Shown here: piece after piece, positions 7,686-64,000 of the stretch
Position numbering within the stretch: the first letter of the stretch is position 1
How the letters are laid out: each line of letters opens with the position of its first letter
Virus record (IMG/VR): IMGVR_UViG_3300033153_015063
Location: 178,597 to 242,596 of that record
Length of the DNA: 64,000 nt
Reading direction: 5' to 3' (one strand)
Translations under genes and position numbers: made by a program
The notes under the pieces: generated by a model
The model's database searches: none
Seen by the model: the letters and a program-made list of their open reading frames with translations, nothing else
Told to the model about the DNA's origin: nothing

Positions 7686-8480
7686 CTACAATCCAAGTCT
7701 CTTTCTTACGTCACCTTCAGATATTTTTCCCTTTCTTCCCTGAGTCTCGAACGGGAAAATGCCAAGAAATTCCATATTGAGTTCTTTTAATTCTTTATTT
7801 TTCTTCTCAATATCTTCTATTGTTACACCTCTAGTCTCTCGAACTCCGTTTCCTATGACTTTTAATATCTCTTTCCAGTACGTTTCATTTTTCAATAAAA
7901 CAGGGCTGTCGGTTCTGATACACTGTAGGTTCAGGTCTTCCCAGGTTGCTGGTCTCCTATATGCAAGAAGCCTTATATCACCAGCAACATTTGGTAACAT
8001 TGGGTCATCTATAGTGTCTCTCCATAGACCTAATCTTATATGGAAATATTTATCGTATGTTTGTAACTCATCTTCGCTATAAGGATTCCTCTCGACCATT
8101 GCACGACCACCATCTGTTAATGTATATATATTGTCCAGATAATCATCGCCTTTTTGTAGTGTGAGGAGACCTCTACCAACTAGACATTGAAGGGTGCCCA
8201 GTTCTCCTATCTGTCCTTCTCGATATTTTGAAATTCCACCCCTTTCATGTATCTTCATTAAAGGCACTCTCTCATCTATTGGAAGTAACCATATCTCGTC
8301 TCGTTCCCATTTTTTCTGGCACACGAGATTATCACACTCGCTCAATTCCTTCAAGAACTCATCCTCTCTCAGCTCAGGAGAATCTCCAACAGGGCCCCTG
8401 TATTCCATATTACCTGTTTCTGGATTGTACTCGTAGCGATAGCGGTTGCCTGAGCCAGGAGGGATTTCGACGATGGTCAT
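7686..8480 (-). CDS. shared-leader family member 1 (payload contains a wHTH-like segment)
   Basis: N-terminus MTIVEIPPGSGNRYRYEY...YRGPVGDSPELREDEFL; ATG at 8480 lies 23 nt after TTTTTATA. Confidence 0.85.
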   Translation of the reverse strand: MTIVEIPPGSGNRYRYEYNPETGNMEYRGPVGDSPELREDEFLKELSECDNLVCQKKWERDEIWLLPIDERVPLMKIHERGGISKYREGQIGELGTLQCLVGRGLLTLQKGDDYLDNIYTLTDGGRAMVERNPYSEDELQTYDKYFHIRLGLWRDTIDDPMLPNVAGDIRLLAYRRPATWEDLNLQCIRTDSPVLLKNETYWKEILKVIGNGVRETRGVTIEDIEKKNKELKELNMEFLGIFPFETQGRKGKISEGDVRKRLGL

Positions 8481-8580
8481 CAAGGAATAGAAGGGGTGGT
8501 GGGTATAAAAATGTGATGGTGGTACTTGTTACTTCAAACTAAGCAATTAATGATAATACAATAGCATTAGGCACAGTTAT

Positions 8581-9645
8581 TTAACTCTTTGGTCTGAACA
8601 ATCGTTGTTTGTAGTTGCGGTCAGGCTCTTCGCCACTTTTCAACCGCTTGTATTTATGCCACTCACAGAGAGAGTGTTCGATGTTGATTAGTGATAGCTC
8701 TCTCACGGGTGGATACCAGCTCTCATCTCCGGCATAGTAATCCCTTTCATTCTCATACTTATCGTCGTCCCAGTAGTGTTCCCGTTCGACGTCCAGGGAT
8801 ATCTCAATGAAAGATGGGTGTTGTGGGGTGTTGCGTAGATACTTGAAATCATGTCCCAACCTTTTGAAGTGCTTCCGTTGACTTTTACAGAGATAGGTGA
8901 TTGCCTTTACATAATCCCGTTGCCCCAGTCTGTTTTTATCTTTCCTTGAAGCGAGATATTCAAGTCCCGATTTTGCACCTGGTCCTGGATCTACGAAATC
9001 ATTTTCTGAAAACGGATTGTTGTTTGAGATAGTGAGATAGTAGTTATAGTCGATGGCGATTTCAAAGGCGAGAAATCTTGAGATAAGAGAAATATCCTGT
9101 AGTGCCTCCCATATTCTACGTATAGTCCCAGCCCCATCTATTTGTCTGTAATATAAATTAAGATGTTTTTTGAGGTCTCGTTCTATCACTTCAACGAAAA
9201 TAGTGGTTAGTTTGTTATCTGTCCCAGCTACTTTGTGGGTGTGGCTAGGCGAGAAAACCTGTTGATTGTGGTCGTTGGACCACTCAGAGACGACATCAAC
9301 CATCGCCTCCCCATCCCACTCCCCCGGGTCCTGTAAACCCATGAAAATCATGGTTTCCGGGTGGTTTATCAGGCGGTAGAGGATTATGTTGAACAGGATC
9401 TTCATCCCAACTTCATCTGGGTCATCATCGGGGTTGTTGATAGGTAAGATGATGTTCTCAATGATGAACCTGGTCCCTCGGTCAAGCTCTCGATAGACGT
9501 TGGAGAAGTGGTACTTCGAGAGGATAGGGTCCTTGGTCCAGGATGCTACTTCCTTCGGGTGTTGACGCTGATGCCATATCTCCTGACGTTCATAAACAAA
9601 GGACCAGAACTCGTCCATCATATCTGTGTGTATTTGTATAGACAC
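8581..9645 (-). CDS. DNA base-modification protein of the aGPT-Pplase1 / 5-hmdU DNA kinase helical-domain family
   Basis: FVYERQEIW...WTKDPILSKYHFSNVYRELDRGT, GPGAKSGL and IEHSLCEWHKY match the motifs of this family as I recall them. Confidence 0.75.
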   Translation of the reverse strand: MSIQIHTDMMDEFWSFVYERQEIWHQRQHPKEVASWTKDPILSKYHFSNVYRELDRGTRFIIENIILPINNPDDDPDEVGMKILFNIILYRLINHPETMIFMGLQDPGEWDGEAMVDVVSEWSNDHNQQVFSPSHTHKVAGTDNKLTTIFVEVIERDLKKHLNLYYRQIDGAGTIRRIWEALQDISLISRFLAFEIAIDYNYYLTISNNNPFSENDFVDPGPGAKSGLEYLASRKDKNRLGQRDYVKAITYLCKSQRKHFKRLGHDFKYLRNTPQHPSFIEISLDVEREHYWDDDKYENERDYYAGDESWYPPVRELSLINIEHSLCEWHKYKRLKSGEEPDRNYKQRLFRPKS

Positions 9646-9742
9646 AGAATGTAAATGGCCGAGAGAGATTAAAAAGATAGCGGGTTGTTTTTGAGTGGCG
9701 ACTCAGACTTCGAGGTCACGAGCTCCAGACCCTCGGAGCGGG

Positions 9743-21717: not shown

Positions 21718-21735
21718 GATACTTACCTGACCTCT

Positions 21736-32490: not shown

Positions 32491-32970
32491 CTATTTCCCA
32501 TGCCTCTCTTTAAGTTCACGTTGCATAGCCGGAAACGTTCGGTTGAGACGATAAGCTTCATCAGCCCTTTTCCACGCCGTTTCTGGATTGGCATAACCAC
32601 TCTTTGCCTGATAGACCTCACTGAACTGCCCAAGACCAGTATTGGACTTACTACTCAATGGATTTCGCTGATACGCTTTCCATTTTCCATTACCTTCACG
32701 AACAAGTTTATATTCCAGGAAATTGGTCTCATCGAGTTTGACAATCATACCTGCATACAACCCATCTTCTACGACAGGCCAATCTGTGATTGATGGTAGA
32801 TTCAGGGGAAGGCTATCGTGTATTGTTATACCACCAACCATCCTCTCCAGGAACTCTCCCTCCGTCAACTGAGGACTGTCTCCCACAGGCCCCTTGTAAA
32901 CCGTAGCTCCCTCTTCGTAGACGTATTTGTAGCGGTTACCTGAACCTGGAGGGATTTCGACGACGGTCAT
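32491..32970 (-). CDS. shared-leader family member 2
   Basis: MTVVEIPPGSGNRYKYVYEEGATVYKGPVGDSPQLTEGEFLERM. Confidence 0.85.
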   Translation of the reverse strand: MTVVEIPPGSGNRYKYVYEEGATVYKGPVGDSPQLTEGEFLERMVGGITIHDSLPLNLPSITDWPVVEDGLYAGMIVKLDETNFLEYKLVREGNGKWKAYQRNPLSSKSNTGLGQFSEVYQAKSGYANPETAWKRADEAYRLNRTFPAMQRELKERHGK

Positions 32971-33046
32971 GGTATCAATGTGGGATGGGCTGAGGAGTAT
33001 TTAAAAGGTTCTAACGTTTTACGTTTTGTATTTCATTACTGTCGAC

Positions 33047-35111: not shown

Positions 35112-35852
35112 TTAACCGATGATGTGTATTTCGCCACCGTAAACGGCATACTCGAAGCTTCTACCATCCTTTGCTAACACTATGTAATGGGGATAGTAAC
35201 GGCGGCCTCTTCCCATGTAGAAATCCTTGAGCCTGATACCCTCGATGTTGTTGAGTACCCTTATTTCTCGGCCAAAGAAAGGATTGTTCTTCCGTTCCCT
35301 TCCGGTAGGCGTCTGCCACTGGCTCATCAACCACTTACTGACCTTCTGGTTCTGTTCTTTTGTCAGGGGGATACCCCCCTCCATCTCTACCCATGTTTGT
35401 AGAGTTCCCAAGTGTACATCCTCTCCACTGTTCTTCCGTCGAGTAAGAAGATTAATTTCCTGTTCTGTGAGATGGTCCTTACCCCAATCTATCTCCTTTC
35501 TTCGGGATTTTTTCAGGCTCCCCTCGTTGTACCATGTGCCATGCACCTTGTAGGCCCACCACCCACTGACTTTGAGTTTTTTATCATCGTCGTACCAGCC
35601 CTCCCGCCATTCCTTGAGTGTCACAGGATGATAACCCCAGTTGGGGCTATCAGGGAGGGTGAGATAGTCACCGAGCTCAAACTTATTCTTCGGGACTTTC
35701 CCTTTCCCACCTTCCATCCCCTTCAAGAACTCCTCCTCCGAAAGCCCAGGACTATTCCCTACAGGCCCCTTGTAGACTGTGTCCTGGGTGCCCTTGTCGT
35801 AATCATACCTGTAGCGGTTCCCTGAGCCCTCAGGAATCTCAACGGTGGTCAT
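35112..35852 (-). CDS. shared-leader family member 3
   Basis: MTTVEIPEGSGNRYRYDY...VYKGPVGNSPGLSEEEFL. Confidence 0.85.
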   Translation of the reverse strand: MTTVEIPEGSGNRYRYDYDKGTQDTVYKGPVGNSPGLSEEEFLKGMEGGKGKVPKNKFELGDYLTLPDSPNWGYHPVTLKEWREGWYDDDKKLKVSGWWAYKVHGTWYNEGSLKKSRRKEIDWGKDHLTEQEINLLTRRKNSGEDVHLGTLQTWVEMEGGIPLTKEQNQKVSKWLMSQWQTPTGRERKNNPFFGREIRVLNNIEGIRLKDFYMGRGRRYYPHYIVLAKDGRSFEYAVYGGEIHIIG

Positions 35853-35903
35853 CAGGGGAGGAAAGGGCTGAGGAGTATTTAAAGATTCGGAGGGAGGATC
35901 GGA

Positions 35904-36647
35904 TTACTCGGTCCTTTTCAGGACCTTTTTACCGAGTGGCCCGATATCATAATAGACTGATTTGCCACGTTTAGATTTGATGATATAACCGTCGTCAGCC
36001 CATCCACCCAGTATCATGCCACCCTGACGCCCACCTGGAAGCATACCCGCTTTTTTCAGCTCGGTCTGGGCAACAGATCCCTCTTTCTCCAGATGGATGA
36101 TAAGGTTGTGTTTTTTCGAACCATCTCTCACGGCACCAGGTCCGACCAGGTCATCTTCGACCTTTTCCTTCCAGTTGGGGACGTCCTTGTTCTGGACTAC
36201 AATTTTCTTTAGTGCGGTCTTGTAGCGTTTGGCCCTACTTCCATACCCGTAGTTTACCTTCACGAACTCGTCGATGAACTGATTTTTCCAGGTGTCAGGC
36301 TTGAGTCTGGTTGTGGTTGGGTCGTCGGCCTGGATGAACTTACCCTCACGCCCTTTGAACACCACACCATCAATACTCTTACCTGTCAGACCTTCGAGTT
36401 GTTTTTGGAGTTCAGCGACCTCATGGTAGGTCTTTTCGTGTTCACCGGCCGGTTCAGTGACCAACTCTGGAGTATGGTCATCAATGTCGATGATAGTTGG
36501 AGTTTTGAACCTCTCCAGGAACTCCTCCTCCGAAAGCTCAGGTGCTTCTCCCACAGGCCCCTTGTATTGTGTCTTTCCTTCCTCGTACTCGTACCTGTAT
36601 CTGTTACCGGACCCTGGTGGAATCTTGTTGGACTGGCGGCGGTTCAC
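35904..36647 (-). CDS. shared-leader family member 4 (C-terminal winged-helix payload)
   Basis: IPPGSGNRYRYEYEEGKTQYKGPVGEAPELSEEEFLE; GTG start overlaps the stop of member 5; MarR-like C-terminus. Confidence 0.85.
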   Translation of the reverse strand: MNRRQSNKIPPGSGNRYRYEYEEGKTQYKGPVGEAPELSEEEFLERFKTPTIIDIDDHTPELVTEPAGEHEKTYHEVAELQKQLEGLTGKSIDGVVFKGREGKFIQADDPTTTRLKPDTWKNQFIDEFVKVNYGYGSRAKRYKTALKKIVVQNKDVPNWKEKVEDDLVGPGAVRDGSKKHNLIIHLEKEGSVAQTELKKAGMLPGGRQGGMILGGWADDGYIIKSKRGKSVYYDIGPLGKKVLKRTE

Positions 36648-37153
36648 TTTTTTTGTGGTATATGGAAGAAATCCTCCGTTTCCTTCACATTTTCCATCTT
36701 ACGGAGCGATTTTTGAAGAGCTGTACTGGCCTGAAACTTTTCGACCACGATACCATTCTCATAATCTGATATTATTTGACGTAAAGCATCCTGATATCTT
36801 CCCTGACCTCGATATAATTCATCGAGCTCCGTGTTCCAGATTGCTATCAGGTTGATATTATCTATTCCGACCTGTTCTTTGAATTTTTTACTATCGCCAA
36901 CGTACTCAAAACCAGCGATATGGCCGATTCGTTTTCGGCCATCATAGATACCATATATCGCTGTTTTATACTCAGACTTCAAACGACGCACCCTGGTTGT
37001 ATATGAGACGTTTTTACCAGCCATCCTCTCCATGAACTCAGCCTCTCCCAGCTCAGGTGCTTCTCCCACAGGTCCTTTGTACTGTGTCTTGCCATTCTCG
37101 TACTCATAGCGGTATCTGTTGCCACTTCCAGGAGGGATTTCAACTATGGACAT
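36644..37153 (-). CDS. shared-leader family member 5 (GNAT-like payload)
   Basis: Leader, then ELDELYRGQGRYQDAL resembling the GNAT acetyl-CoA-binding motif A. Confidence 0.8.
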   Translation of the reverse strand: MSIVEIPPGSGNRYRYEYENGKTQYKGPVGEAPELGEAEFMERMAGKNVSYTTRVRRLKSEYKTAIYGIYDGRKRIGHIAGFEYVGDSKKFKEQVGIDNINLIAIWNTELDELYRGQGRYQDALRQIISDYENGIVVEKFQASTALQKSLRKMENVKETEDFFHIPQKK

Positions 37154-37190
37154 TGGAGAGTGATAGGGGAGGGAGGATAAGAAGATTGTG

Positions 37191-37243
37191 GTAGGATGGT
37201 GGGATGGAGTAGGATGGTGGGATGGAGTAGGGAGGTGGGAGGA
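37191..37243 (+). repeat. 18-bp tandem repeat (GTAGGATGGTGGGATGGA x2 plus a degenerate third copy)
   Basis: Read directly at 37191..37208, 37209..37226 and 37227..37243, in a divergent intergenic gap. Confidence 0.8.
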
Positions 37244-41174: not shown

Positions 41175-41702
41175 TTATTTCCTGGATGTACTTCTACGAC
41201 TGCCCCCTTCCCCCATCGCCTTCTGAGATTTCCGACGGAGTTCTTGAAGTGTGAGGTTACCCCAACGAAGCTCAGCCTCTTTGACACCATCATCTGTGAT
41301 ATAACCGTAGATGACACTAAAATAATAAGGACTACCAGCCTCTCTAAAACGTTCACCCTTCTGTCTGGTCAGGCCCCTCTTGTTGAGGCTATGTATGATA
41401 CGGAGATCAACGTTCGACAACCCAGGAGATTCCAATCCAGTTTCGTGTGTTCTTCCTCGTCCACCAGTTGTTTTATCCTCGGTCACCAGACGATAGTGGG
41501 CATAGAGACGGAGGAGATACTCCTCCTGACTGACGCTGAGCTCAACCTGGCCCTTTCTCTTCATCCTCTCCAGGAACTCCTCCTCACTCAGCTCAGGTGC
41601 ATTGCCGACCGGCCCCTTGTACACGGTCTTTCCTTCCTCGTAATCGTAGCGATAGCGGTTGCCTGAACCTGGAGGAATCTCTACAGTGGTCGGATGTTGT
41701 GA
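41175..41702 (-). CDS. shared-leader family member 6, lacking a canonical start codon (wHTH-like payload)
   Basis: The frame is open from the TAA of member 7: SQHPTTVEIPPGSGNRYRYDYEEGKTVYKGPVGNAPELSEEEFLERM, with CCG where other copies have ATG. Confidence 0.75.
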   Translation of the reverse strand, partial: SQHPTTVEIPPGSGNRYRYDYEEGKTVYKGPVGNAPELSEEEFLERMKRKGQVELSVSQEEYLLRLYAHYRLVTEDKTTGGRGRTHETGLESPGLSNVDLRIIHSLNKRGLTRQKGERFREAGSPYYFSVIYGYITDDGVKEAELRWGNLTLQELRRKSQKAMGEGGSRRSTSRK

Positions 41703-42440
41703 TTAGGTTATGATCCTTATCCATACGTCGTTCTTTCCAGCATATCCGATAAATTTGTATTCATTTGATTGTGCCCGATTCCTGACTGCCCTCAAACCAG
41801 TGTCGTAGAATGGTATAATATTCAATATCTCTTCTTGGCTCATATTTTCCTGGGCCCACGCCTTTGGATTATTCGATATTTCTTCTTTGAAGTCATTAAA
41901 TGCAGATGTTTGCCAACTCCACCCTATCGCTGCTTCATAGTCATCCTCATCCCATCCATCTTCCCAATCGTCAGGTGGAAAATACTCGTCTGGGTTGAAA
42001 TGTTCTTCACGTAGGTAATCCTGACCTTGCCAACCCAGAAAATCGTGCCACTTCACGTGGTCCATGAGTACCGGGAGATATCTATCTGGAACGTCTTTAA
42101 CGCTATTAAATCTATTTGAAAGGTCAATATCTACACCTTCTTTGTTGATGAAGAACTCATACTTTTCATTCCCTTTCTTGATAACACCACCACACGTTCT
42201 GGTAATGTCAACCTCCAGATCCTTTCTATCGACGCCCCAGTGACTTGCCAGTAAGTCAATCTCTGGTATGAACTCATCGTCCCAATCGCCCACACCACCA
42301 ACCATCATCTCCAGGAACTCCTCCTCTCCCAGCTCAGGTGCTTCTCCCACAGGCCCCTTGTAGATTGTAGCCTTGGTCTCAGCATCATAGACGTATTTGT
42401 ACCTGTTGCCGGACCCTGGGGGGATTTCGACGACGGTCAT
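41703..42440 (-). CDS. shared-leader family member 7 (acidic payload)
   Basis: MTVVEIPPGSGNRYKYVY...YKGPVGEAPELGEEEFLEMM. Confidence 0.85.
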   Translation of the reverse strand: MTVVEIPPGSGNRYKYVYDAETKATIYKGPVGEAPELGEEEFLEMMVGGVGDWDDEFIPEIDLLASHWGVDRKDLEVDITRTCGGVIKKGNEKYEFFINKEGVDIDLSNRFNSVKDVPDRYLPVLMDHVKWHDFLGWQGQDYLREEHFNPDEYFPPDDWEDGWDEDDYEAAIGWSWQTSAFNDFKEEISNNPKAWAQENMSQEEILNIIPFYDTGLRAVRNRAQSNEYKFIGYAGKNDVWIRIIT

Positions 42441-42485
42441 TGGAGAGTGATAGGGCCGGAGAGTATAAAAAGATTGGTAGTTACT

Positions 42486-46201: not shown

Positions 46202-46576
46202 CTATCTACCCCTCAACTCTTTCGTCTTCCTGGCCAACGCCAACGAACCTCCCAACGTTTTAATAGCCTCACGTGGGGCGTGTTCAGGTAGCATAAGTCT
46301 ACCCTCATAAACAATCGCCACATCTGAACCATTGTAGTAGATTAATCTGGGGCAGTTTTGTTTACACTGGCATCGTGTGGCTTTTGCCACCCCTTTCTCA
46401 TCTCGACGGTCTTCCATCAACAGAAGAGTAGGTGGTTCTTGATCCATAGCCGCCATGAACTCCTCCTCCGTCAACTGAGGGCTATCCCCGACCGGCCCCT
46501 TGTAGACCGTAGATCCACCTTCGTACTCGTACCTGTATTTATTCCCTGAACCCTCAGGTATCTCTACGGTGGTCAT
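46202..46576 (-). CDS. shared-leader family member 8
   Basis: MTTVEIPEGSGNKYRYEYEGGSTVYKGPVGDSPQLTEEEFM. Confidence 0.85.
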   Translation of the reverse strand: MTTVEIPEGSGNKYRYEYEGGSTVYKGPVGDSPQLTEEEFMAAMDQEPPTLLLMEDRRDEKGVAKATRCQCKQNCPRLIYYNGSDVAIVYEGRLMLPEHAPREAIKTLGGSLALARKTKELRGR

Positions 46577-46619
46577 TGGAGAGTGATAGGGCCGGAGAGT
46601 ATAAAAAGATGGTGATTAG

Positions 46620-47780
46620 TTAACCGTCACTCGTATTGAAGTACTGACCACATTTATCCTTGACGCAGAGACCCCAGTGTTTCAGGGTTGAACAGTTCGG
46701 GGTATTGTATGGTGGATCGTTGAAAGCTATCTGGTAGACTTGTATCTTCGTTTCCTCTTCACTCCAGTCAGCCATGTTGAGGTTCTTGAAAAACTCGATG
46801 ACTTTCTCAGGTGGCCACTTGTAGTAGTTGAGTAGTAGTACTGCCACGTAGAGTCTGGTGATGTGGGATGGTTCCGATGAACCCAATATATCGTTGTGGA
46901 TACATGGTTTTTGGAACATCTTTTTGATTACTTCTGTCTGTGGATGAGTGTAGTTTCCTTTGTATTGGCTATAGACAGCAATACCTTTACTACCACCCAT
47001 TTTCAACCAATCTTCTATCCTGATATCAAATCTTTCCATGAACTCATCCAACGTCAACAGGTCTTTTGTCCTATCAATAACCGGTTTGATAGGATGCCAC
47101 TTCTTACATCTCTTGATGATTGTGGCGTGGTTAAATTCCATCATAATATCGTTCGGGACGACCATACAGTAAGTATCCTTTACAAAGTATCGACTGTTCT
47201 TGAATTTCGAGTATCTGTATCCAGGCACTCTTACCAGACGCCGATAGTCGCCCTTTACACGGATATCAAGTGTCCGAAGTAACCTGAAGTTGCCTGGATT
47301 GACCAACTTATCATCATCACCCCGTTGCCATAACCACCCCTTTGCCCCAATCCAGTTCGAGACCGCCCTCAACTTGAGTTTGAGCTCTGTGGCCTGTTCT
47401 ATCTTCCTGATGGAGAAACGTTGTGGTTTCAGGATGACATAAGAGTGATAACCCTTTGAACCAGTAAAGATACCGACGTGCTGAAAATTCTCTTTCTCAC
47501 ACCATTCAATTATTTCCCTGATGTCACTCAGGGCGTGTTCTGGCTTCTTTTCATCGTCCAGGTCGTTATAGAGATGGTCCACGATACACCAGCGTCCTGG
47601 TTTGAAGCAGTAGAGGGAGACGAAGCAGCAGTAACCCATCTTCTCCCACATCTTCAGGGCGTTGAATAATTGCCGCTTATCAGATACCCGTTGTTGGTGT
47701 GGATTCCCCATGTAACGTGGCATCTTGACAAAGTTCAACACGTGACCGGTTTCGGAGTACCATTTTTCCTCGTCAACCAT
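46620..47780 (-). CDS. priS: archaeo-eukaryotic primase: PriS catalytic domain fused to a PriL Fe-S C-terminal domain
   Basis: NDLDD, FTGSKGYH and RLVRVPG; then PCI...SHITRL...PNCSTLKHWGLCVKDKC. Confidence 0.85.
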   Translation of the reverse strand: MVDEEKWYSETGHVLNFVKMPRYMGNPHQQRVSDKRQLFNALKMWEKMGYCCFVSLYCFKPGRWCIVDHLYNDLDDEKKPEHALSDIREIIEWCEKENFQHVGIFTGSKGYHSYVILKPQRFSIRKIEQATELKLKLRAVSNWIGAKGWLWQRGDDDKLVNPGNFRLLRTLDIRVKGDYRRLVRVPGYRYSKFKNSRYFVKDTYCMVVPNDIMMEFNHATIIKRCKKWHPIKPVIDRTKDLLTLDEFMERFDIRIEDWLKMGGSKGIAVYSQYKGNYTHPQTEVIKKMFQKPCIHNDILGSSEPSHITRLYVAVLLLNYYKWPPEKVIEFFKNLNMADWSEEETKIQVYQIAFNDPPYNTPNCSTLKHWGLCVKDKCGQYFNTSDG

Positions 47781-54317: not shown

Positions 54318-54361
54318 GTTACGCTTTTTACAGTTAAACAAGCTGAAAGTATATAAAGACC
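54318..54361 (+). promoter_or_regulatory. conserved promoter cassette, copy F
   Basis: TTACGCTTTTTACAGTTAAACAAGCTGAAAGTATATAAAGACC. Confidence 0.8.
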
Positions 54362-54376
54362 AATAGAAAGCTAGTA

Positions 54377-54712: not shown

Positions 54713-54825
54713 TCGATCTATCCACTTCCCAACCCCCTCTTTTTTGGTCTCTCTTTTTTTCCACACACTATAATTGGCTGCACCTTACACTATAATAATC
54801 TATAAAAGGGAAAAGACTGGTTTAG

Positions 54826-55350
54826 TTGCTGATGGCTGTCAACACCAGTGAGAAAAAAACTGTTGGTAGCGACGGTAATGTCACTCTCCAGACGCCATTT
54901 CTTGCAATGATACTAGCTCTGGGCGTCTCGTTGTTGGTTATTATCATCTACACGAGTGGGCTTTTCAAGTACGCTTACACACTGTTTGTGGTGTATATGA
55001 TATATACCTCGATAGAGCGTCAAACAGAACCGATGGAAGTAAAAAAGCAGGAAAACCCTGGGTTGGTGAGGAAAGACCTTGGGATTGACGAGAACCATAT
55101 TATTTTTGGCGTCGATAAAATCGGTGGCATCAAAAAAGTTGATGATGTTGACGTTGATTCTGTAGAGTTGTTGATTGCTGAGCCAGATAACGCCAAAGAA
55201 ACGGACGATGATGAGTTGTGTTGGGTTATCTTTCGAGAGAGAGAGGGAAAGATAACAGAACATATCATCGTCCGTTCATTTATACTTGGTAGGATTATGA
55301 TTTATTCGTGGGGTGAAAACGATGGGCTCATTGAAGGAAGAGTTAGATAA
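54826..55350 (+). CDS. two-pass membrane protein
   Basis: Two adjacent hydrophobic helices; overlaps the ATPase start. Confidence 0.65.
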   Translation: MLMAVNTSEKKTVGSDGNVTLQTPFLAMILALGVSLLVIIIYTSGLFKYAYTLFVVYMIYTSIERQTEPMEVKKQENPGLVRKDLGIDENHIIFGVDKIGGIKKVDDVDVDSVELLIAEPDNAKETDDDELCWVIFREREGKITEHIIVRSFILGRIMIYSWGENDGLIEGRVR

Positions 55351-57001: not shown

Positions 57002-57012
57002 GAAGTAGTAGT

Positions 57013-57186
57013 ATGATGAAACGATTAATATTAGTCATCAAACGCCGAATACAACTATTTTTCTATAACAGGAAATCAGACTATTGGAAGTGTAAGGAAA
57101 AGAAAAGTGACCCATACATGGTCAATTTTGATTATAAACGTCTTCTTCGGAAGGAGTGTGAAAAATATGACGCCAAAGGTGAGTAA
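57013..57186 (+). CDS. small basic protein (57 aa), missed by the ORF track
   Basis: Hand translation MMKRLILVIKRRIQLFFYNRKSDYWKCKEKKSDPYMVNFDYKRLLRKECEKYDAKGE fills the gap between the ATPase and the next gene. Confidence 0.45.
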   Translation: MMKRLILVIKRRIQLFFYNRKSDYWKCKEKKSDPYMVNFDYKRLLRKECEKYDAKGE

Positions 57187-57187
57187 T

Positions 57188-57616
57188 ATGACCAAAGAGG
57201 AAGAGATGGCTATCTGGTGCAAGAAGAACAAAAACAATCGCTATGTTCTCAAATGGATTGAGAAGAATCCAGCCGGAAAGAAGTGGGTCGAGAATGGTCA
57301 CACTGACCTTGAGTGGGCTTTCACCGAGATGCCACTCTACTTCAATGATATCGAAGGTATCGTTGCTATGATATTCATATCAGTCTTTTTCTTAATCATA
57401 AGTGGTTTTGCATATTATTTTTTGTTTATGTTTATTGTTGTCATAACCATTCTCGGTGCAGGTTTCTTGTTGAATTGGCGTGATGAGAAAAGGAGGTTAG
57501 ATACCAATAAGAGAGAAAATAAGAGAGAAAATAATGATCGAAATAGTAAGTTATTCCATGATACGTTCGATGCTTGTATGATAACGAGTAAGAAAGGGGA
57601 TGACACAGGTGAATAA
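57188..57616 (+). CDS. two-pass membrane protein
   Basis: Start moved to ATG 57188 after GGTGA; long hydrophobic hairpin. Confidence 0.65.
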   Translation: MTKEEEMAIWCKKNKNNRYVLKWIEKNPAGKKWVENGHTDLEWAFTEMPLYFNDIEGIVAMIFISVFFLIISGFAYYFLFMFIVVITILGAGFLLNWRDEKRRLDTNKRENKRENNDRNSKLFHDTFDACMITSKKGDDTGE

Positions 57617-57690
57617 AATGGAGATACAAATAGGTAGATTCTTCACGATTCTTTCTCTACGAATTAAGATGAAAAATAGTTGGTGACGAT

Positions 57691-59061
57691 ATGGGAAAAA
57701 GGGCAAAACAGGTAGCTTCAGGCTATGCACCTGGTAGTGGCACAGCCCAGCAGTACCCAGGTCAGGCTGCTATCCTGAATCTGGATGAAGGTACTATCAA
57801 CGAAATGGTCACTCCGCAGGTTGACCAGGCTATCGTCACTGGGCGTCTCCAGGAGATTCAGGACCACGCAGATGTCGGGGCCTATATGAGGGACTTTGAT
57901 AGAATTAAAGATAAAGCCCACTTCCTTTCCACAATCGGAGACCCCGATGAGTTAAAAAAGAAAGTCCCGAAGCTCGGACATTGTAAAGTCAAAACGCAGG
58001 ATGAAGTCGAGGAAATGTCAAAAAAGCAGAAGCGGGATACGGAGATACTCATCTATTTCCTGGTTGCTGTTCACATCGTTGGTTACGTTGCTGCGTTCGT
58101 TTTTGCATGGTATGTTATCTGGGGTATGGTCACCGGATTCTGGGGAAGGTTAGCTATCATTATAAACAAAGTTCTTAATGGGTATATAGTCACTGCACCC
58201 TATGGAGTCCCAGTTGTATTTCCTTTTACAGGAACATGCGGATTGTTTATAGGGACGTGGTTAATTTCCCTGGTTTGGTCTTCAATGCGTATTATCAGTG
58301 AGAAATTGGGTGGTTTTGCCGGTTTCTACTACATTATGGATGACAATATGAATGTCCGAGGAAGATTCTTCGCTGCTGGACAGACTTTGACAGGAACACA
58401 CATGGTCAGCGATACCGTCATGTGTAATGTATCCACTCCCGCTGAGAGTATCAACGAACCAAGATTCATAGCGGTCTGGAAAATGTTTAAAAGTTGGTTC
58501 CCGTTTTATCTGGGAAACCAGGTGAGAGTCGATAAAATAGTTATTTTCTCAACGAAGGATATGTTTTTCCCAACCGAGAATTACGCTAACCAGCACAACC
58601 AGATACTTGGTGAATTATACGATACTGGTTATTACTATACATCTGGACCGACAATCTATAAAATATATACATGTGACAAAGTTATGGCCTGGAACAGGAT
58701 ACCTCCTGGTGCTTACCCAAAAATCACCTACCAGGCGATGTCGGCCTACAAGGGTGTCAGCATACAGCTCCGTATCAAGGAAAAGAACCTCCAACTCCTC
58801 TTTACAGAGATTGAGTTGCTCCTTCGTAACAAACACATCACCGACAGGCACTTCATCAAGCTGGTCTCTGACCGTCTGACACAGATGGGATTGATTGACC
58901 GCCAGACCGGTGTCATCAGGGCAAAGTATGGCGGATACTGGGATAACATCGGAGAACGCCAGAAGCTGTCGAGTGGTTGGAAGCAGCTTTATGAGGACAG
59001 AAAGTTGCTCGAAGACGCCAAGGAGAAGTACGCTCCAAAGACACGCTATACGGGTGATTAG
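57691..59061 (+). CDS. multi-pass membrane protein
   Basis: Two to three hydrophobic segments followed by a large soluble domain. Confidence 0.7.
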   Translation: MGKRAKQVASGYAPGSGTAQQYPGQAAILNLDEGTINEMVTPQVDQAIVTGRLQEIQDHADVGAYMRDFDRIKDKAHFLSTIGDPDELKKKVPKLGHCKVKTQDEVEEMSKKQKRDTEILIYFLVAVHIVGYVAAFVFAWYVIWGMVTGFWGRLAIIINKVLNGYIVTAPYGVPVVFPFTGTCGLFIGTWLISLVWSSMRIISEKLGGFAGFYYIMDDNMNVRGRFFAAGQTLTGTHMVSDTVMCNVSTPAESINEPRFIAVWKMFKSWFPFYLGNQVRVDKIVIFSTKDMFFPTENYANQHNQILGELYDTGYYYTSGPTIYKIYTCDKVMAWNRIPPGAYPKITYQAMSAYKGVSIQLRIKEKNLQLLFTEIELLLRNKHITDRHFIKLVSDRLTQMGLIDRQTGVIRAKYGGYWDNIGERQKLSSGWKQLYEDRKLLEDAKEKYAPKTRYTGD

Positions 59062-60948
59062 ATGTCGTTAACAGAAGCGAACGAGAACGAGAATCGTTTC
59101 GAACTTGGAGGGGACGATGAGGATGAAGAATTTAGCCTCTCCAAACTACGTGAACAAGTTGAGGTGTTTGACAACAAAGACAAAGGTAGACAGGAGAGTG
59201 CTGAGGCACTTACCTATCGCTGGTTGGAGTTGATGTTGGAGGGCGGACGGGACGAGATACTCTACGACCTGAACGTTCGAGAGTTGGTGGATATCGTCCC
59301 ATTCGCCCGACGCATCATACACTCTAAAATCGGACATATTCTTGGTCTGATGAAAAAGATAGCTGGTCTCCTGTACAAATACGAGTTGTTCGGTGAGTTC
59401 TACAGCAGCAGGACGCCGGGTATGTTCGGTGAAGACTACATCTCTATTCAAGGAGAACTTATCGAGAAGCAACTTGAGATGATAAAACTGATGCTTCCTG
59501 CTCTTGGAGCTGCCGACACTACATTAGATCAATTATCCTCAAACTTCGACTCTATTGGCTATGAACTGCAGAAGCAGGCAGTACCGAAGATGATGAGAGA
59601 GACCATCGTGGTTCTGTATCTACTTGCCAGAGAAGGTTCTGTCGAAGAGGCAAATCTCCAATTAATGGCAAAACGGCATGGTATCGAACACGTCCAGAAG
59701 CAGGTTCTCGAAGGTATTGAGTTCGGATGGGTCGAACGTGATGAGAACAAATTGAAGTGGAAATCGGCAAAGATGAGAACCTTCATGCTTACTATAGGTG
59801 AGATATCTGCAGTTGAGACACTTCCCGAAATCGTGAAGCAAAAGGAGGAAGATAACAACGCATTACGTCGTCAGGTTCGTAAGTTATCAAACATCGTGTT
59901 TAAATTAAAAGGTGGTCACGAGCTACTGGAAGAGTTTGATATGAGCGAACAGGAACTGGAAGAAATCGCCGAGATGAGTCCTGGTCCAGACCCCGAAATC
60001 AAAGCGTTGTTAGATGTTTTCACTGGTCAGATGACTGGTCTGGTAGGTGAACTGAAAGAGAGTAACAGGATACGGGACGAAGAGACACGCATCCTCCGAG
60101 AAGAGATATCTGACACCAAATTCACACCTTTCACACCGCCACCCCGGATCGAGGAATCGAGTCATTTTGATACGACCGACACTTTCTCATTAGATGATGA
60201 CCAAGAACTCGAAAACATACCTGTTTCTTTTGGGCTCGATGACGTTACTGAATCCGATGAGATTGATGAAAGTGATGGCGACACCACAGCCACAGATGAC
60301 ATCGTTGAACCTGACAAAGGTGTGAAGAAAAAAAAGCAGAGGGAAATAACGGATGAGGAGTTGGAAGAGGAAGAGAAAAGAAAAAAAGAGGCCCGTTCAA
60401 TGTTCGAAAAAACCAAGTTCGAAGCAAGAGATTTTGTTATGTGTGAGTTTTATCTGGGCCCAAAGGAAATAAAAGAACTGGAAGATAGACTGTCTACTCT
60501 TGATGAAGGTTCTGATGAATGGATACAGACAAAGGTAACGCTGGAGATGAAACCAGATACACATTGTAAGATAGGCTTCAAGCCAACTACTCTGGTGATG
60601 GACAACAAAACATGTATGTTTCAACTCCCGGTCCCAGACGAAGATGGATTTTATTGTGGTGTTACTGCATTGGTAAATAAGGGGTATGATGATGAAACAA
60701 TTTCTACTCTACTTGGTGATAGGGCAGCTACCTTTAAATGCCCTCATTGTGATGAGTGGTTCAAGAAGGAAATCTCCCTTAAGAGTCATATAAAAAGAAA
60801 TCATAAAGAAGAGAAAAAAACGGATGTCGAGGAGAAGCTCCCTTTTTGTACCTGCCGGACCTGTGGTTACATATTCCATGACGAAAAAGAGTATGACCTT
60901 ACTGATGGTAAATGCCCATCAGGTTGTGGTAAGGTCGAAAAAGAGTAG
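59062..60948 (+). CDS. coiled-coil protein with wHTH-like segment, acidic linker, C2H2 zinc finger and zinc ribbon
   Basis: CPHCDEWFKKEISLKSHIKRNH and CRTCG...CPSGCG. Confidence 0.7.
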   Translation: MSLTEANENENRFELGGDDEDEEFSLSKLREQVEVFDNKDKGRQESAEALTYRWLELMLEGGRDEILYDLNVRELVDIVPFARRIIHSKIGHILGLMKKIAGLLYKYELFGEFYSSRTPGMFGEDYISIQGELIEKQLEMIKLMLPALGAADTTLDQLSSNFDSIGYELQKQAVPKMMRETIVVLYLLAREGSVEEANLQLMAKRHGIEHVQKQVLEGIEFGWVERDENKLKWKSAKMRTFMLTIGEISAVETLPEIVKQKEEDNNALRRQVRKLSNIVFKLKGGHELLEEFDMSEQELEEIAEMSPGPDPEIKALLDVFTGQMTGLVGELKESNRIRDEETRILREEISDTKFTPFTPPPRIEESSHFDTTDTFSLDDDQELENIPVSFGLDDVTESDEIDESDGDTTATDDIVEPDKGVKKKKQREITDEELEEEEKRKKEARSMFEKTKFEARDFVMCEFYLGPKEIKELEDRLSTLDEGSDEWIQTKVTLEMKPDTHCKIGFKPTTLVMDNKTCMFQLPVPDEDGFYCGVTALVNKGYDDETISTLLGDRAATFKCPHCDEWFKKEISLKSHIKRNHKEEKKTDVEEKLPFCTCRTCGYIFHDEKEYDLTDGKCPSGCGKVEKE

Positions 60949-60951
60949 TTT

Positions 60952-61069: not shown

Positions 61070-61675
61070 CTAGTAATCCATGTGGAGTTCCATTGCTATA
61101 ACCCTTTTTTCCACGGGCTTTCTCCCAAGACCTTTGATGTCGCCCCAGAACAACTCACTCACACCACGCCATATCTGGTAATCCTCTTTGGGGTAGTATG
61201 CATCTCGGCTGAGAGGATTATATTCTTCACGTTCGGCACCCCAGAACTCATATTCGTGGAGATTGGTCAGTGCTTTGAACTCGCTATTGGTCATTTTCTT
61301 CGGGACCCATACCCACTTGTGGACCTTCTCACAGCCCATTTTCCCCTTATCCGCTATAAACTTCATCTCTCGTTTCTCATAGGGACCAATACTCCACCTG
61401 TCTCTGAAGGCTTCAACATATTTTGCTGTATGTTTACCTTCGGTGGACGTATCATCAAAAGGGGCGACGAATACGAATACTTCATCCTCTATCGGTTCCC
61501 TGACCATCTCCCGCCCCTCAAACTCTCCCCTCGATGCCACCTTCATCCTCTCCAGGAACTCCTCCTCCGTCAACTGAGGGCTATCCCCGACCGGCCCCTT
61601 GTAAACCGTAGCTCCCTCTTCATATTCATAGCGGTATCTATTCCCTGAACCCTCAGGTATCTCTACAGTGGTCAT
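61070..61675 (-). CDS. shared-leader family member 9
   Basis: MTTVEIPEGSGNRYRYEYEEGATVYKGPVGDSPQLTEEEFLERM; ATG at 61675 lies 23 nt after TTTATATA. Confidence 0.85.
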   Translation of the reverse strand: MTTVEIPEGSGNRYRYEYEEGATVYKGPVGDSPQLTEEEFLERMKVASRGEFEGREMVREPIEDEVFVFVAPFDDTSTEGKHTAKYVEAFRDRWSIGPYEKREMKFIADKGKMGCEKVHKWVWVPKKMTNSEFKALTNLHEYEFWGAEREEYNPLSRDAYYPKEDYQIWRGVSELFWGDIKGLGRKPVEKRVIAMELHMDY

Positions 61676-61726
61676 CAAGGAATACAATGGGTGTTGAGTA
61701 TATAAAGAGTTCTAACCTCCCCTCCC

Positions 61727-61771
61727 TTTTACGCTTTTTACGGTTGTTTGGCCTGAAAGTATATAAAGACC
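61727..61771 (+). promoter_or_regulatory. conserved promoter cassette, copy G
   Basis: TTTACGCTTTTTACGGTTGTTTGGCCTGAAAGTATATAAAGACC. Confidence 0.8.
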
Positions 61772-61802
61772 AAGATGCGGGTAAGAGTTAGGTGATGCAA
61801 AC

Positions 61803-62354: not shown

Positions 62355-62417
62355 GCCCAACCAACCACTACCCCAAACCCTTTATTTTATCCCTTCTCTT
62401 TTCTTTATTGTGCTAAC

Positions 62418-63164
62418 CTAGAATCTCATGGCACCTAATCGCTGTTCTGCCACTTCACAATATTCCTTGGACATGTCTATTCCGATGAACCGACGCCCAA
62501 GCCTGCTGGCGACGGCTGTGGTCGTTCCTGCCCCGTTAAAGGGGTCTAAAACAGTGTCTCCAGGCCATGAAAAGAGTTTGATGAGGCGATATACCAGTTC
62601 CTCGGGAAACATCGCTGGGTGCCCAAAATCCCGCATCTTTCTCTCCGGGGCGATGGACCACTTAGCCGTTGTCCATTGCTTGAACTCGTCGCCATCCAGG
62701 TCGCTTTCGATCCCATCTGGTCTCTTCTTTGTGTAGGTATCTTTACAGAACACTTCGATGAACTCCCAGGTGTATTTGAGATATGGGTTGCTCGGGGATT
62801 TCCAGCTCCCCCAGGCCGTGTACTTACAGTTGTAGTTGTTCTTCTCCCACAGTATCTCGCCCTTCCATAGGAATCCAAGGTCGGTAAGGTCTTTTGTGAT
62901 GATGTGATGGGTTGGTTGATAGACTTTCCAGTTGGGTTGGATGACGATACACAACCGACCACCTGGTTTCAAAACTCCCCTTATCTTTTGCCAGATACCA
63001 TACAACCACTCGAAGTACTGGTCCCAATCCTGGACATCATCGTGGGTATCGTATTCTATCCCGTAGTTGTAAGGTGGGCTGGTCACTACCAGGTCAATAG
63101 AGTTTTTACCCAGAGTAGATATCTCATCGTAGGCATCTCCACAGATGATGGAATCTTCCATCAA
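62418..63164 (-). CDS. DNA methyltransferase (N4-C/N6-A, beta class)
   Basis: VTSPPY, HPAMFP and VLDPFNGAGTT. Confidence 0.92.
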   Translation of the reverse strand: MMEDSIICGDAYDEISTLGKNSIDLVVTSPPYNYGIEYDTHDDVQDWDQYFEWLYGIWQKIRGVLKPGGRLCIVIQPNWKVYQPTHHIITKDLTDLGFLWKGEILWEKNNYNCKYTAWGSWKSPSNPYLKYTWEFIEVFCKDTYTKKRPDGIESDLDGDEFKQWTTAKWSIAPERKMRDFGHPAMFPEELVYRLIKLFSWPGDTVLDPFNGAGTTTAVASRLGRRFIGIDMSKEYCEVAEQRLGAMRF

Positions 63165-63481
63165 AACCGCAGGCCACCGAATATCCGAGAACTCCAGATC
63201 CTGAGTGGCCGGCCGTGATTGTGGTTGACCCGGGTAGACCGCTTGAACTCATCGGTCTGGGTGCAGATGCCATCTTTTTTTGCTTCCATCATCACAGGAC
63301 CCATGATCCTTGGTTCTCTGGGAGTTTCGAGAGAAGACTGTTCTATCTTCTCCCATACATCATCAGTCGTGAACTTCCGTTTGGCCAACGCAATCAGACG
63401 CACGAAGTGGCCAACCTCATCTTTCCAGGTCTTTTCGTCCATGATAGGAAAACACCGGTCGAGTTTAAAAAGATTAATCAT
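63161..63481 (-). CDS. conserved phage HTH-like hypothetical protein
   Basis: FTTDDVW...EPRIMGPVM...HGRPLRIWSS. Confidence 0.6.
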   Translation of the reverse strand: MINLFKLDRCFPIMDEKTWKDEVGHFVRLIALAKRKFTTDDVWEKIEQSSLETPREPRIMGPVMMEAKKDGICTQTDEFKRSTRVNHNHGRPLRIWSSRIFGGLRF

Positions 63482-64000
63482 CGAACTCTCTTCTTACATC
63501 CTTTGCGTGTTCTATCACGTCTCCAACACTGTCGCCATCTTCCCAACTGACACCCCTACTCCACTTAATGTCACCATCTCCGTCATAGTAGTAGACAACG
63601 ACAGATTCCTCATAGTGTTCGAAGCCGTACTCACCCTTCCCGGTCCAATATGAACAAACTTCCTGTGTCATCTTCGTCTTTCTGGTCACATGAGCTTTTT
63701 TGATGACGTCTTCGATGGTGTCGCCCTCCTTCCAGTAGGCAACTCCACCCCACGAGAAATTCTTTCCTGAACGACCATAGGATATGACAGTGACTCTCTC
63801 CCCTTTATGTTCGAACGTATATGTGATGCCTTTCAATTTGATTTTATCCAGGTCTCTTGACGTCCTCTCATCCACCACCTTCATAATCTCCAGGAACTCC
63901 TCCTCCGAAAGCTCAGGTGCTTCTCCCACAGGCCCCTTGTATTGTGTCTTTCCTTCCTCGTACTCGTACCTGTATCTGTTACCGGACCCTGGTGGAATCT
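63474..64000 (-). CDS. shared-leader family member 10 (5' end beyond the window)
   Basis: The frame is open to the window edge: IPPGSGNRYRYEYEEGKTQYKGPVGEAPELSEEEFLEIM. Confidence 0.85.
   Translation of the reverse strand, partial: IPPGSGNRYRYEYEEGKTQYKGPVGEAPELSEEEFLEIMKVVDERTSRDLDKIKLKGITYTFEHKGERVTVISYGRSGKNFSWGGVAYWKEGDTIEDVIKKAHVTRKTKMTQEVCSYWTGKGEYGFEHYEESVVVYYYDGDGDIKWSRGVSWEDGDSVGDVIEHAKDVRREFDD

What the first reader, a model, noticed from the sequence alone, without database searches (positions are those of the whole stretch)
7686..64000. Ten dispersed genes share one ~45-aa N-terminal leader fused to unrelated payloads: a candidate polymorphic cargo system
Seen: ORFs at 7686, 32491, 35112, 35904, 36644, 41175, 41703, 46202, 61070 and 63474 (all minus strand) begin with MT[TVI]VEIP[PE]GSGN[RK]Y[RK]Y.Y...G.T.YKGPVG[DEN][SA]P[EQ]L.E.EF[LM]..M. 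After the leader they diverge completely in length (124-265 aa) and content: wHTH-like in members 1, 4 and 6, GNAT-like in 5, acidic or unknown in the rest. They sit singly or in tandem at operon boundaries between core replication genes. Established: N-terminal targeting sequences load diverse anti-host proteins into phage heads (T4 internal proteins), and polymorphic effector systems use a constant N-terminus with a variable C-terminus. Inference: the leader is a sorting or tethering module, either for virion loading or as a small three-strand beta plus helix DNA-binding domain. The Y.Y...G...Y.GP[VL]...helix pattern recalls the N-terminal domain of fusellovirus integrases (ORF D-335-like). 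It would deliver a swappable arsenal of effectors with the genome. I do not recognise this system as described.
Basis: partly seen in the sequence, partly recalled or inferred. Interest (0 to 1): 0.92.

Follow-up and report, generated by a model that had tools for sequence, protein, structure and literature searches.

The report
Shared N-terminal tag on many genes
A 242-kb virus-like element of an uncultivated archaeon puts the same 45-residue N-terminal mini-domain, with its own promoter, on at least 41 otherwise unrelated genes (ten of them in this window); no database describes this family, and it most likely works as a common address or docking tag.

Summary
Ten minus-strand genes in the window share a ~45-aa N-terminal leader; their payloads show no detectable similarity. 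The window is the last 64 kb of IMG/VR contig UViG_3300033153_015063 (242,596 bp), which carries at least 41 leader loci.

A leader profile finds 290 protein clusters among 1.84 billion representatives, almost always N-terminal. 190 distinct payloads fall into 155 families. Pfam, PHROGs, NCBIfam, PDB, GenBank phages and 185,579 species genomes hold no match.

The repeat unit runs from −45 to +130: an archaeal TATA promoter, a leaderless ATG, then the leader. Beyond that, identity is random. The peptide is under purifying selection (pN 0.15, pS 0.62), folds confidently as three β-strands plus a helix, and is always acidic or neutral. Leaders evolve in concert within a genome.

Best reading: a protein-protein docking or address tag joining many accessory proteins to one partner, on a recombining promoter-leader cassette. 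Virion loading is possible but untested and mildly disfavoured. DNA binding and an integrase-like origin are not supported. The partner is unknown.

The parts
7686..8525 (-). Member 1. CDS 7686-8480 (264 aa); leader encoded at 8343-8480; class-1 TATA promoter within 45 nt upstream of the ATG at 8480.
   Evidence: Leader HMM 89.8 bits. No family hit for the payload.
32491..33015 (-). Member 2. CDS 32491-32970 (159 aa); leader 32833-32970. Its promoter subtype (CTTTAAATAC...) is near-identical at three other loci of the contig.
   Evidence: HMM 99.1 bits.
35112..35897 (-). Member 3. CDS 35112-35852 (246 aa); leader has a 2-residue insertion in the b2-b3 turn; own TATA promoter.
35904..36647 (-). 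Member 4. CDS 35904-36647 (247 aa). GTG start overlaps the stop of member 5 and there is no own promoter. The first strand is replaced (MNRRQSNK), then the canonical IPPGSGN... follows. Leader DNA is identical to member 10 over about 110 nt.
36644..37198 (-). Member 5. CDS 36644-37153 (169 aa); degenerate TATA (TTCTTATCC). An 18-bp tandem repeat lies just upstream at 37191-37257.
41175..41690 (-). Member 6. Intact leader plus payload (171 codons), but no ATG and no TATA. In frame 12 nt after the TAA stop of member 7. The first canonical start is a GTG at 41624, inside the leader.
   Evidence: HMM 100.5 bits.
41703..42485 (-). Member 7. CDS 41703-42440 (245 aa); acidic, W-rich payload; own TATA promoter.
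46202..46621 (-). Member 8. CDS 46202-46576 (124 aa), the shortest payload (80 aa); own TATA promoter.
61070..61720 (-). Member 9. CDS 61070-61675 (201 aa; = P0001), the protein used for structure prediction; own TATA promoter.
   Evidence: HMM 103.3 bits.
63474..64000 (-). Member 10. CDS starts beyond the window end. The first 7 codons and the promoter lie at contig positions 1-120, after a 64-bp terminal overlap.

Best explanation
The unit is a cassette made of three parts: an archaeal BRE/TATA promoter, a leaderless ATG, and a 45-48-aa autonomously folding, acidic mini-domain. The domain has three antiparallel strands held by four invariant tyrosines, then a GPVGxxP loop and an acidic helix ending EF(L/M)xx(M/I/L). 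Any of well over a hundred unrelated payload proteins follows.

Shown:
- The domain is constrained at the protein level.
- It is a modular add-on.
- It is homogenised among the roughly 40 copies in a genome by gene conversion.
- It marks a clade of related large archaeal virus-like elements.

Inferred:
- The domain is a protein-protein docking or address tag. Through it, many accessory proteins, mostly ORFans plus a few nucleotide-metabolism enzymes, methyltransferases and AAA+ ATPases, bind one shared partner and are brought to the same place or complex.
- Leader genes use the promoter type of the replication and nucleotide-metabolism genes. I therefore favour an intracellular hub during genome replication (replisome or factory, or an AAA+/chaperone machine) over late loading into capsids.
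- The shared DNA also works as a portable recombination handle. It lets payloads be gained, lost and re-headed, and it keeps all tags matched to the partner.
For: - Protein-level constraint: pS 0.62 versus pN 0.15 among 24 ungapped paralogous leaders, including TCN/AGY serine codon switches.
- Conservation: the leader is about 65% identical between clades whose best core genes are 60-66% identical.
- Independent fold: pLDDT 92-95 over residues 1-30 with the deep alignment, and the same topology when folded alone. Near stand-alone members of 68-72 aa exist.
- Modularity: 137 of 150 hits are N-terminal. 190 payloads form 155 families. Leaderless homologues of payloads exist, including a tandem paralogue.
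- Sharp homology block from -45 to +130, with mosaic patches of 100% identity.
- Concerted evolution: 34-38 of 38 paralogous leaders are closer than the leader of the payload's orthologue.
- Soluble, cytoplasmic character: no TM-like run in any payload, and the leader is acidic.
- Promoter class is shared with the RFC, TS-like, 5-hmdU-kinase, methylase, Topo IA and GyrA-like genes.
Against: - No partner has been identified, and no co-varying gene could be sought because the relatives are 1-4-kb contigs.
- The timing inference rests only on promoter motifs. Leader promoters differ slightly (ATAC versus AAAC) from those of the replication genes.
- Concerted evolution is explained by gene conversion alone and does not require a partner.
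- A folded tag could equally mediate self-association, stability or turnover.
- Invariant residues map mostly to the predicted core, so no obvious conserved binding surface is evident from sequence.
Confidence: 0.45

Rival explanations
1. Capsid-targeting domain. The leader binds the scaffold or inner capsid surface so that dozens of accessory proteins are packaged and co-injected with the DNA. This would resemble the T4 CTS on internal proteins and the head-packaged paralogue families of giant phages. It may be trimmed by a head protease at the conserved L-x-E.
For: - Constant N-terminus with variable payload is the T4 IP logic.
- Giant phage SPN3US packages about 55 head proteins, including a 21-member paralogue family, with N-terminal propeptides of 20-254 aa (PMC10052503).
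- The element is jumbo-sized.
- A conserved L35-x-E37 fits the T4-type (L/I)xE site.
- A neighbouring gene on one relative carries ART-PolyVal, a domain of head-delivered polyvalent proteins.
Against: - No capsid, portal or prohead protease was recognised in 95% of the element. There is only a faint TerL signal, E=0.003.
- Leader genes carry the promoter class of replication genes, not that of the candidate structural or adhesin operons.
- The tag is a 45-aa folded domain, not a short peptide.
- There is no conserved site at the leader/payload junction.
Confidence: 0.2
2. Gene-capture and expression cassette. The promoter, leaderless start and a small, well-folding N-terminal domain are propagated mainly because they give any newly acquired ORF transcription, efficient leaderless initiation and solubility. 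The shared DNA serves as a recombination handle. The peptide itself has no specific partner.
For: - Promoter and leader move as one block with sharp borders and mosaic conversion tracts.
- Most payloads are ORFans.
- Truncated remnants indicate birth-and-death turnover.
- Tandem arrays reach 6 copies in 3.3 kb in relatives.
Against: - Nineteen residues are invariant across 31 paralogues. Purifying selection has held at saturated synonymous divergence and across clades. That is more constraint than a generic solubility tag needs.
- Non-leader genes use the same promoter type without the leader.
Confidence: 0.17
3. Self-association or regulated-turnover module. The leader oligomerises by strand-edge pairing into mixed assemblies of payloads. 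Alternatively, it is a common degron or recognition element for an AAA+ unfoldase or protease, so that the whole set is co-regulated after translation.
For: - A small open three-strand sheet with free edges.
- The element encodes several AAA_5/MoxR ATPases and two CobT-type VWA proteins, and four relatives fuse the leader to AAA_5.
- PrsW and a weak metalloprotease hit are present.
Against: All of this is circumstantial.
Confidence: 0.12
4. Small nucleic-acid-binding domain (AP2/integrase-N-like or Sso7d-like) that tethers payloads to viral DNA.
For: - Three strands plus a helix is the AP2/integrase-N topology.
- AP2 and PC4-like entries appear among the non-significant Foldseek hits.
- The strands are rich in tyrosine.
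Against: - Net charge is -7 to 0 in all 138 members, mean -3.4.
- All fold matches have E>=0.77.
- There are no sequence hits to any DNA-binding family.
Confidence: 0.04

Closest known systems
T4 capsid targeting sequence on internal proteins (IPI-III, Alt), and head-packaged proteins with N-terminal propeptides in giant phages (SPN3US, phiKZ)
   Same: A constant N-terminal element on otherwise different proteins of one virus. Loci are polymorphic between relatives. Jumbo genome. A conserved L-x-E within the tag.
   Different: - The T4 CTS is about 10 residues and unstructured. This tag is a 45-aa folded domain.
- The giant-phage paralogue families are homologous along their whole length.
- No head protease, scaffold or capsid genes were recognised here.
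- The promoter class matches replication genes.
- Packaging is untested.
Polymorphic toxin / effector systems (Rhs, CDI, LXG/WXG, PAAR-linked)
   Same: Constant N-terminal trafficking part, hypervariable C-terminal part, and recombination at the junction.
   Different: - No secretion-system link.
- No recognisable toxin domains and no paired immunity genes.
- Every copy is a complete, separately promoted gene rather than an orphan C-terminal cassette.
- The element is viral-like and archaeal.
Dockerin-bearing enzymes of cellulosomes; F-box or PRANC/ankyrin multigene families of poxviruses and giant viruses
   Same: One small docking domain is appended to dozens of different proteins so that all engage one hub. 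The family is expanded within a single genome.
   Different: No sequence or fold relation. No scaffoldin-like or SCF-like hub was identified. The domain is N-terminal and the family is restricted to one clade of archaeal elements.
Nif11- and nitrile-hydratase-derived leader peptides of RiPP precursors (own knowledge: Haft et al. 2010)
   Same: A long conserved leader, apparently derived from a fragment of an enzyme, is reused on many different downstream sequences in one genome.
   Different: Payloads here are 80-320-aa proteins, some of them enzymes, not short core peptides. There is no conserved Gly-Gly site (3 of 10 members only) and no maturase or transporter genes.
Family I inorganic pyrophosphatase, N-terminal b1-b2 segment
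   Same: Leader positions 3-22 align to the PPase motif V-[IV]-E-[IV]-P-x-G-S-x-N-K-Y-E-x-D...G. Seven of nine PDB hits are PPases, best E=0.008.
   Different: Only 20 residues match. The Pfam PPase model does not hit. There is no Asp-rich active site. The short-loop leader variants lack the motif. It is at most a remnant, or convergence.

Membership tests
T4-type capsid targeting sequence | Short (about 10 aa) unstructured N-terminal peptide | tested here: not met
   The tag is 45-48 aa and folds confidently, pLDDT 92-95 over residues 1-30.
T4-type capsid targeting sequence | Removal by a prohead protease at (L/I)-x-E; protease and scaffold genes present | tested here: inconclusive
   L35-x-E37 is conserved. 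No prohead protease or scaffold was recognised in 95% of the element. Cleavage itself is not testable here.
T4-type capsid targeting sequence | Tagged proteins are found inside virions | not testable with these tools
   The element is uncultivated and there is no proteome.
Polymorphic toxin systems | C-terminal toxin domains with adjacent immunity genes | tested here: not met
   Pfam on 147 + 31 members found Ham1, RelA_SpoT, methyltransferases, AAA_5 and DUFs, and no toxin families. Neighbours are replication genes or further leader genes.
Polymorphic toxin systems | N-terminal domain tied to a secretion or delivery apparatus | tested here: not met
   The leader matches no known trafficking domain. 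There are no signal peptides or TM segments.
Family I inorganic pyrophosphatase (PF00719) | Match to the family model over the OB barrel with the Asp-rich active site | tested here: not met
   Only a 20-residue local match. The Pfam model gives no hit at E<=10.
   Foldseek to AP2 gives E about 5 over 19 columns. Net charge is -7 to 0. There are no HMM hits.
Double-glycine (bacteriocin/RiPP) leaders | Conserved GG cleavage site, short core peptide, dedicated transporter or maturase | tested here: not met
   GG follows the helix in 3 of 10 window members only, and the position is not conserved family-wide. Payloads are 80-320 aa.
Archaeal tailed viruses (Caudoviricetes), as identity of the host element | HK97 capsid, portal and large terminase | tested here: inconclusive
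   PolB is closest (30% identity) to HF1/HRTV haloarchaeal tailed viruses, and IMG/VR lists the contig as viral. I recognised no capsid or portal, and found only a faint TerL signal, E=0.003. About 5% of the contig was not examined.

The most novel reading that the evidence does not exclude
A clade of jumbo archaeal viruses has its own protein address code. One 45-aa N-terminal domain routes roughly an eighth of the proteome (41+ proteins, over 150 payload families across the clade) to a single virus-specified destination, either the capsid interior for co-injection or a virus-built replication compartment or hub. Gene conversion keeps all tags matched to their receptor, and the promoter-leader cassette serves as a plug-in site for new genes.
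Probability: 0.3. Interest if true: 0.9.

Novelty: new variant of a known kind. Interest (0 to 1): 0.72.

Why it matters
Almost nothing is known about how large archaeal viruses organise infection.

- **Scale:** one tag on about 12% of the genes of a 242-kb element is among the largest single-domain expansions I know of in a prokaryotic virus. It marks a whole clade that no reference database covers.
- **A route to function:** if the tag is an address label, finding its receptor would reveal a sorting or assembly pathway of archaeal viruses. It would also assign a common context to more than 150 families of ORFan proteins.
- **Practical use:** it would provide a portable targeting tag for archaeal cell biology.
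- **Gene gain:** the cassette is a clear natural case of gene gain by recombination at a fixed module border, with concerted evolution of the constant part.
- **Assembly:** the repeated leaders probably explain why these elements assemble so poorly. Relatives are nearly all 1-4-kb contigs that end in leaders.

Tried and rejected
**Leader identity**
- Pfam, PHROGs and NCBIfam on the ten proteins and on leader-only peptides found no family for the leader or for the window's payloads.
- Foldseek of the leader-only model against PDB and BFVD, and of full-length member 9 against PDB, gave nothing significant. Best E values were 0.77, 1.8 and 0.46.
- tblastn of the leader against 50,697 GenBank phage and archaeal-virus records found no match.
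- RNA-level explanation rejected: no Rfam family overlaps the leaders, and synonymous sites are near saturation.
- Double-glycine leader idea rejected.
- PPase homology is kept only as a lead.

**Distribution**
- A degenerate DNA pattern for the leader core found 0 hits in 185,579 species genomes. In IMG/VR it hit only this contig.

**Identity of the element**
- The hunt for virion genes used Pfam and PHROGs on about 50 large ORFs, plus precomputed Pfam for all called genes in five loci. It also used tblastn and PDB searches of the 562/456/628-aa plus-strand operon.
- Only a faint TerL signal came out of that hunt.
- The Methanoperedens jumbo-ECE paper describes a different element type, with Orc1 replication and no shared N-terminus.
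- Sample identifiers were not found in the literature.
- The 23.6-kb relative contig yielded a gene list but no DNA.

**Technical**
- Four contig look-ups failed. Three used GTG-start references, which translate to V rather than M. The fourth started at ATG, so the gene was probably called with a different start.


Full report
**1.

Translating the ten minus-strand ORFs shows the same N-terminus in all of them: M-T-x-V-E-I-P-x-G-S-G-N-x-Y-x-Y-x-Y..G.T.Y-K-G-P-V-G..P.L.E.E-F.

The leader-only alignment has 71% mean column identity and 19 invariant positions. In the full-length alignment, conservation ends at about residue 46. Payloads of 80-218 aa show no significant pairwise similarity.

Some details need correcting:
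- Members 1 and 9 start at the conserved ATGs (8480, 61675).
- Member 4 starts at a GTG overlapping member 5's stop, and its first strand is replaced.
- Member 6 has a perfect leader but no start codon or promoter. It lies in frame 12 nt after member 7's TAA.
- Member 10 is cut by the window end.

**2. The repeat is a promoter-plus-leader cassette**

DNA alignment shows that homology begins about 45 nt upstream of the ATG. Across 21 ungapped copies of the contig, mean identity in 30-nt bins is:
- 25% upstream of the promoter;
- 42% over the promoter;
- 69-78% over the leader;
- 43% at the junction;
- 26% beyond it.

The upstream block is (G)AAC/ATC-TTTWWATAC, with the TATA-like octamer about 24-31 nt before the ATG and no Shine-Dalgarno. 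That is an archaeal BRE/TATA promoter driving a leaderless mRNA.

Close pairs show mosaic tracts of 100% identity next to diverged tracts. This is the signature of gene conversion.

The promoter type is not exclusive to leader genes. The RFC small subunit, a thymidylate-synthase-like gene, the 5-hmdU DNA kinase, a DNA methylase, Topo IA and a GyrA-like gene have it too. A second class, GAAAGTATATAAAGRC with a 5'UTR and a GGTGAT SD, precedes MoxR, CobT-VWA, a SNF2 helicase and the plus-strand operon 54377-60948.

**3. Where it sits**

The window is the last 64 kb of JGI contig Ga0366824_1000500, which is IMG/VR UViG_3300033153_015063 (242,596 bp).

The contig ends overlap by 64 bp, and joining them restores member 10's start. 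The overlap lies inside the repeat, so a circle is plausible but not proven.

Genes found on the element:
- PolB, 30% identical to haloarchaeal tailed viruses HF1/HRTV;
- RFC large and small subunits, and a class II RNR;
- a thymidine-hypermodification kit;
- MoxR/CobT-VWA pairs;
- topoisomerases;
- Ro60/TROVE, a CCA-adding enzyme and a TnpB-like protein;
- a ParA-like ATPase;
- giant TSP3/PKD proteins.

An intron-sized tRNA (145 nt) supports an archaeal host.

I recognised no capsid, portal or prohead protease in the 95% of the contig examined. There is only a faint terminase-like signal in the 562-aa ATPase. So 'virus' rests on IMG/VR's call and on the replication module.

**4. Size and spread of the family**

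Six-frame HMM scans find 41 leader loci on the contig, on both strands. About 35 are intact and a few are truncated remnants.

The leader profile was run against 1.84 billion cluster representatives. It gives 290 hits at E<=1e-3 and 139 at E<=1e-10. Of the best 150, 137 carry the leader at the N-terminus of proteins 68-365 aa long.

A core DNA pattern finds nothing in 185,579 species genomes. In IMG/VR it hits only this contig. In three other JGI metagenomes it hits 36 short contigs holding 80 copies, up to six in 3.3 kb.

Those contigs share non-leader genes with this element at 30-66% identity, so they belong to a related clade.

More distant members replace the IPxGSGN loop by a tight turn (VEI-x-G-H-x-YRY). 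Both forms occur side by side.

No source names any member. GenBank phage records have no match.

**5. Payloads**

190 distinct payloads form 155 BLASTP families, of which 132 are singletons.

Pfam recognises few of them. Across 147 representatives it finds AAA_5 (4), DUF5661 (2), Ham1, RelA_SpoT, methyltransferases and several DUFs. In this genome it finds Ham1, RelA_SpoT and DUF5661 among 31 members.

None has a TM-like run.

Payload families occur with and without the leader:
- a leaderless paralogue (38% identity) directly follows a leader-bearing copy;
- the window ORF 54377-54712 and the window's MoxR gene have leader-bearing homologues elsewhere.

**6. Nature of the leader**

Among 24 ungapped paralogues, pS is 0.62 (88 of 276 pairs are saturated) and pN is 0.15. 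The ratio is about 0.15. The peptide, not the DNA or RNA, is selected.

AlphaFold with the 147-sequence alignment predicts b1 2-5, b2 13-19, b3 22-28 and a helix 37-48, with pLDDT 92-95 over the sheet. Folding the leader alone gives the same topology.

By strand register, the invariant V4, I6, Y14, Y16, Y18, T23 and Y25 lie on one face. They presumably pack against F40/L41/M44. The other face carries R13, R15 and K26. This is inference.

Net charge is -7 to 0 in all 138 members.

No fold neighbour is significant.

The only sequence lead is a 20-residue match to the N-terminal b1-b2 of family I pyrophosphatases. Seven of nine PDB hits are PPases, best E=0.008. The Pfam model does not confirm it.

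**7. Concerted evolution**

All copies in this genome begin M-[TS]-x-VEIP. Relatives begin MGKES/MPKES-x-VEIP.

For three payload families shared with relatives, 34-38 of the 38 paralogous leaders in this genome are closer than the orthologue's leader.

Many leader-payload pairs are therefore old and inherited, while the leaders are homogenised within each genome.

**8. Interpretation**

A 45-aa folded, acidic, strongly constrained N-terminal domain sits on about 12% of the genes. It is fused to unrelated soluble proteins and kept uniform within a genome. That is best explained as a common protein-protein docking or address tag (confidence about 0.45).

The destination is open:
- Promoter class and the lack of recognisable head genes mildly favour an intracellular hub over capsid loading (0.2).
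- A pure expression or gene-capture cassette (0.17) and a self-association or turnover module (0.12) remain possible.
- DNA binding is unlikely (0.04).

**9. Comparison and novelty**

In logic, the closest systems are:
- the T4 capsid-targeting sequence, and the head-packaged families of giant phages (PMC10052503);
- polymorphic toxins;
- dockerin or F-box-type multigene families.

The defining features of each were tested and not met, or could not be tested (see membership table).

The family itself is undescribed. I rate it a new variant of a known organisational principle, with high interest because of its scale and because it offers an entry point into the cell biology of large archaeal viruses.

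**Caveats**
- There is a single assembled genome.
- Repeats could have caused misjoins.
- The virion module is unidentified.
- No experimental data exist.

Noticed in passing
window 47782-47926 (-): A 145-nt tRNA found by Rfam (38.5 bits) but missed by ARAGORN. Its length implies an intron, as in archaeal tRNAs. It lies immediately upstream of the 386-aa gene 46620-47780.
   Followed up: partly
window-wide; e.g. 26500-26545, 21718-21760, 41095-41140, 54330-54376, 61760-61802: A second, sharply defined promoter class (GAAAGTATATAAAGRC, then a 5'UTR with a GGTGAT Shine-Dalgarno) precedes MoxR, CobT-VWA, small ORFs and the plus-strand operon. It is distinct from the leaderless class used by leader and replication genes. 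These may be two temporal classes.
   Followed up: partly
window 37191-37257: An 18-bp tandem repeat (GTAGGATGGTGGGATGGA x3.6) sits in the divergent intergenic region between member 5 and the 696-aa helicase gene. Similar CCCACC-rich tracts lie upstream of leader promoters at five other loci of the contig.
   Followed up: no
window 41690-41705: Member 6 lacks a start codon and a promoter. It is in frame with member 7 across a TAA stop, 12 nt away. This could be read-through, reinitiation or a freshly disabled copy.
   Followed up: partly
window 8581-9645 and 30594-32453 (-): A 5-hmdU DNA kinase and a 619-aa thymidylate-synthase-like protein, plus methylases at 5992-7638 and 62418-63164, suggest hypermodified thymidine in the element's DNA.
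   Followed up: no
window 63937-64000 and contig positions 1-64: A 64-bp exact overlap of the contig ends suggests a circular or terminally redundant genome. The overlap lies inside a leader repeat, so it could also be a repeat-induced assembly break.
   Followed up: partly
leader residues 3-22 of all members (e.g. window 61610-61669): A local match to the N-terminal b1-b2 motif of family I inorganic pyrophosphatases. The leader may be an exapted enzyme fragment, or the match may be convergence.
   Followed up: partly
window 55313-57001 (+): A 562-aa P-loop ATPase heads a plus-strand operon (456 aa and 628 aa follow). It has a faint terminase-large-subunit hit (phrog_2666, E=0.003) and is the only candidate packaging gene seen.
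   Followed up: partly
L072:1774-6648, L069:1-849, L004:11353-14745 (contig 151-156 kb, about 72-77 kb, 91-95 kb): Giant proteins of 1,624, 1,490 and 1,130 aa. The last has 17 thrombospondin type-3 repeats plus PKD, and PKD/CarboxypepD_reg proteins sit next to them. They may be adhesins or fibres.
   Followed up: no
L071:8001-9119; L003:2432-4084; L005:3507-4832; L010:3931-5709: The element encodes a ParA/CbiA-like ATPase, a Ro60/TROVE-vWA protein, a bacterial-type CCA-adding enzyme and a TnpB-like protein. This is an unusual mix for an archaeal virus and is compatible with an episomal lifestyle.
   Followed up: no
contig 51824-52075 and 124542-124691 (L005, L008): Truncated leader remnants (83 and 49 codons, with the leader cut at about residue 36) indicate decay of some copies.
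   Followed up: no
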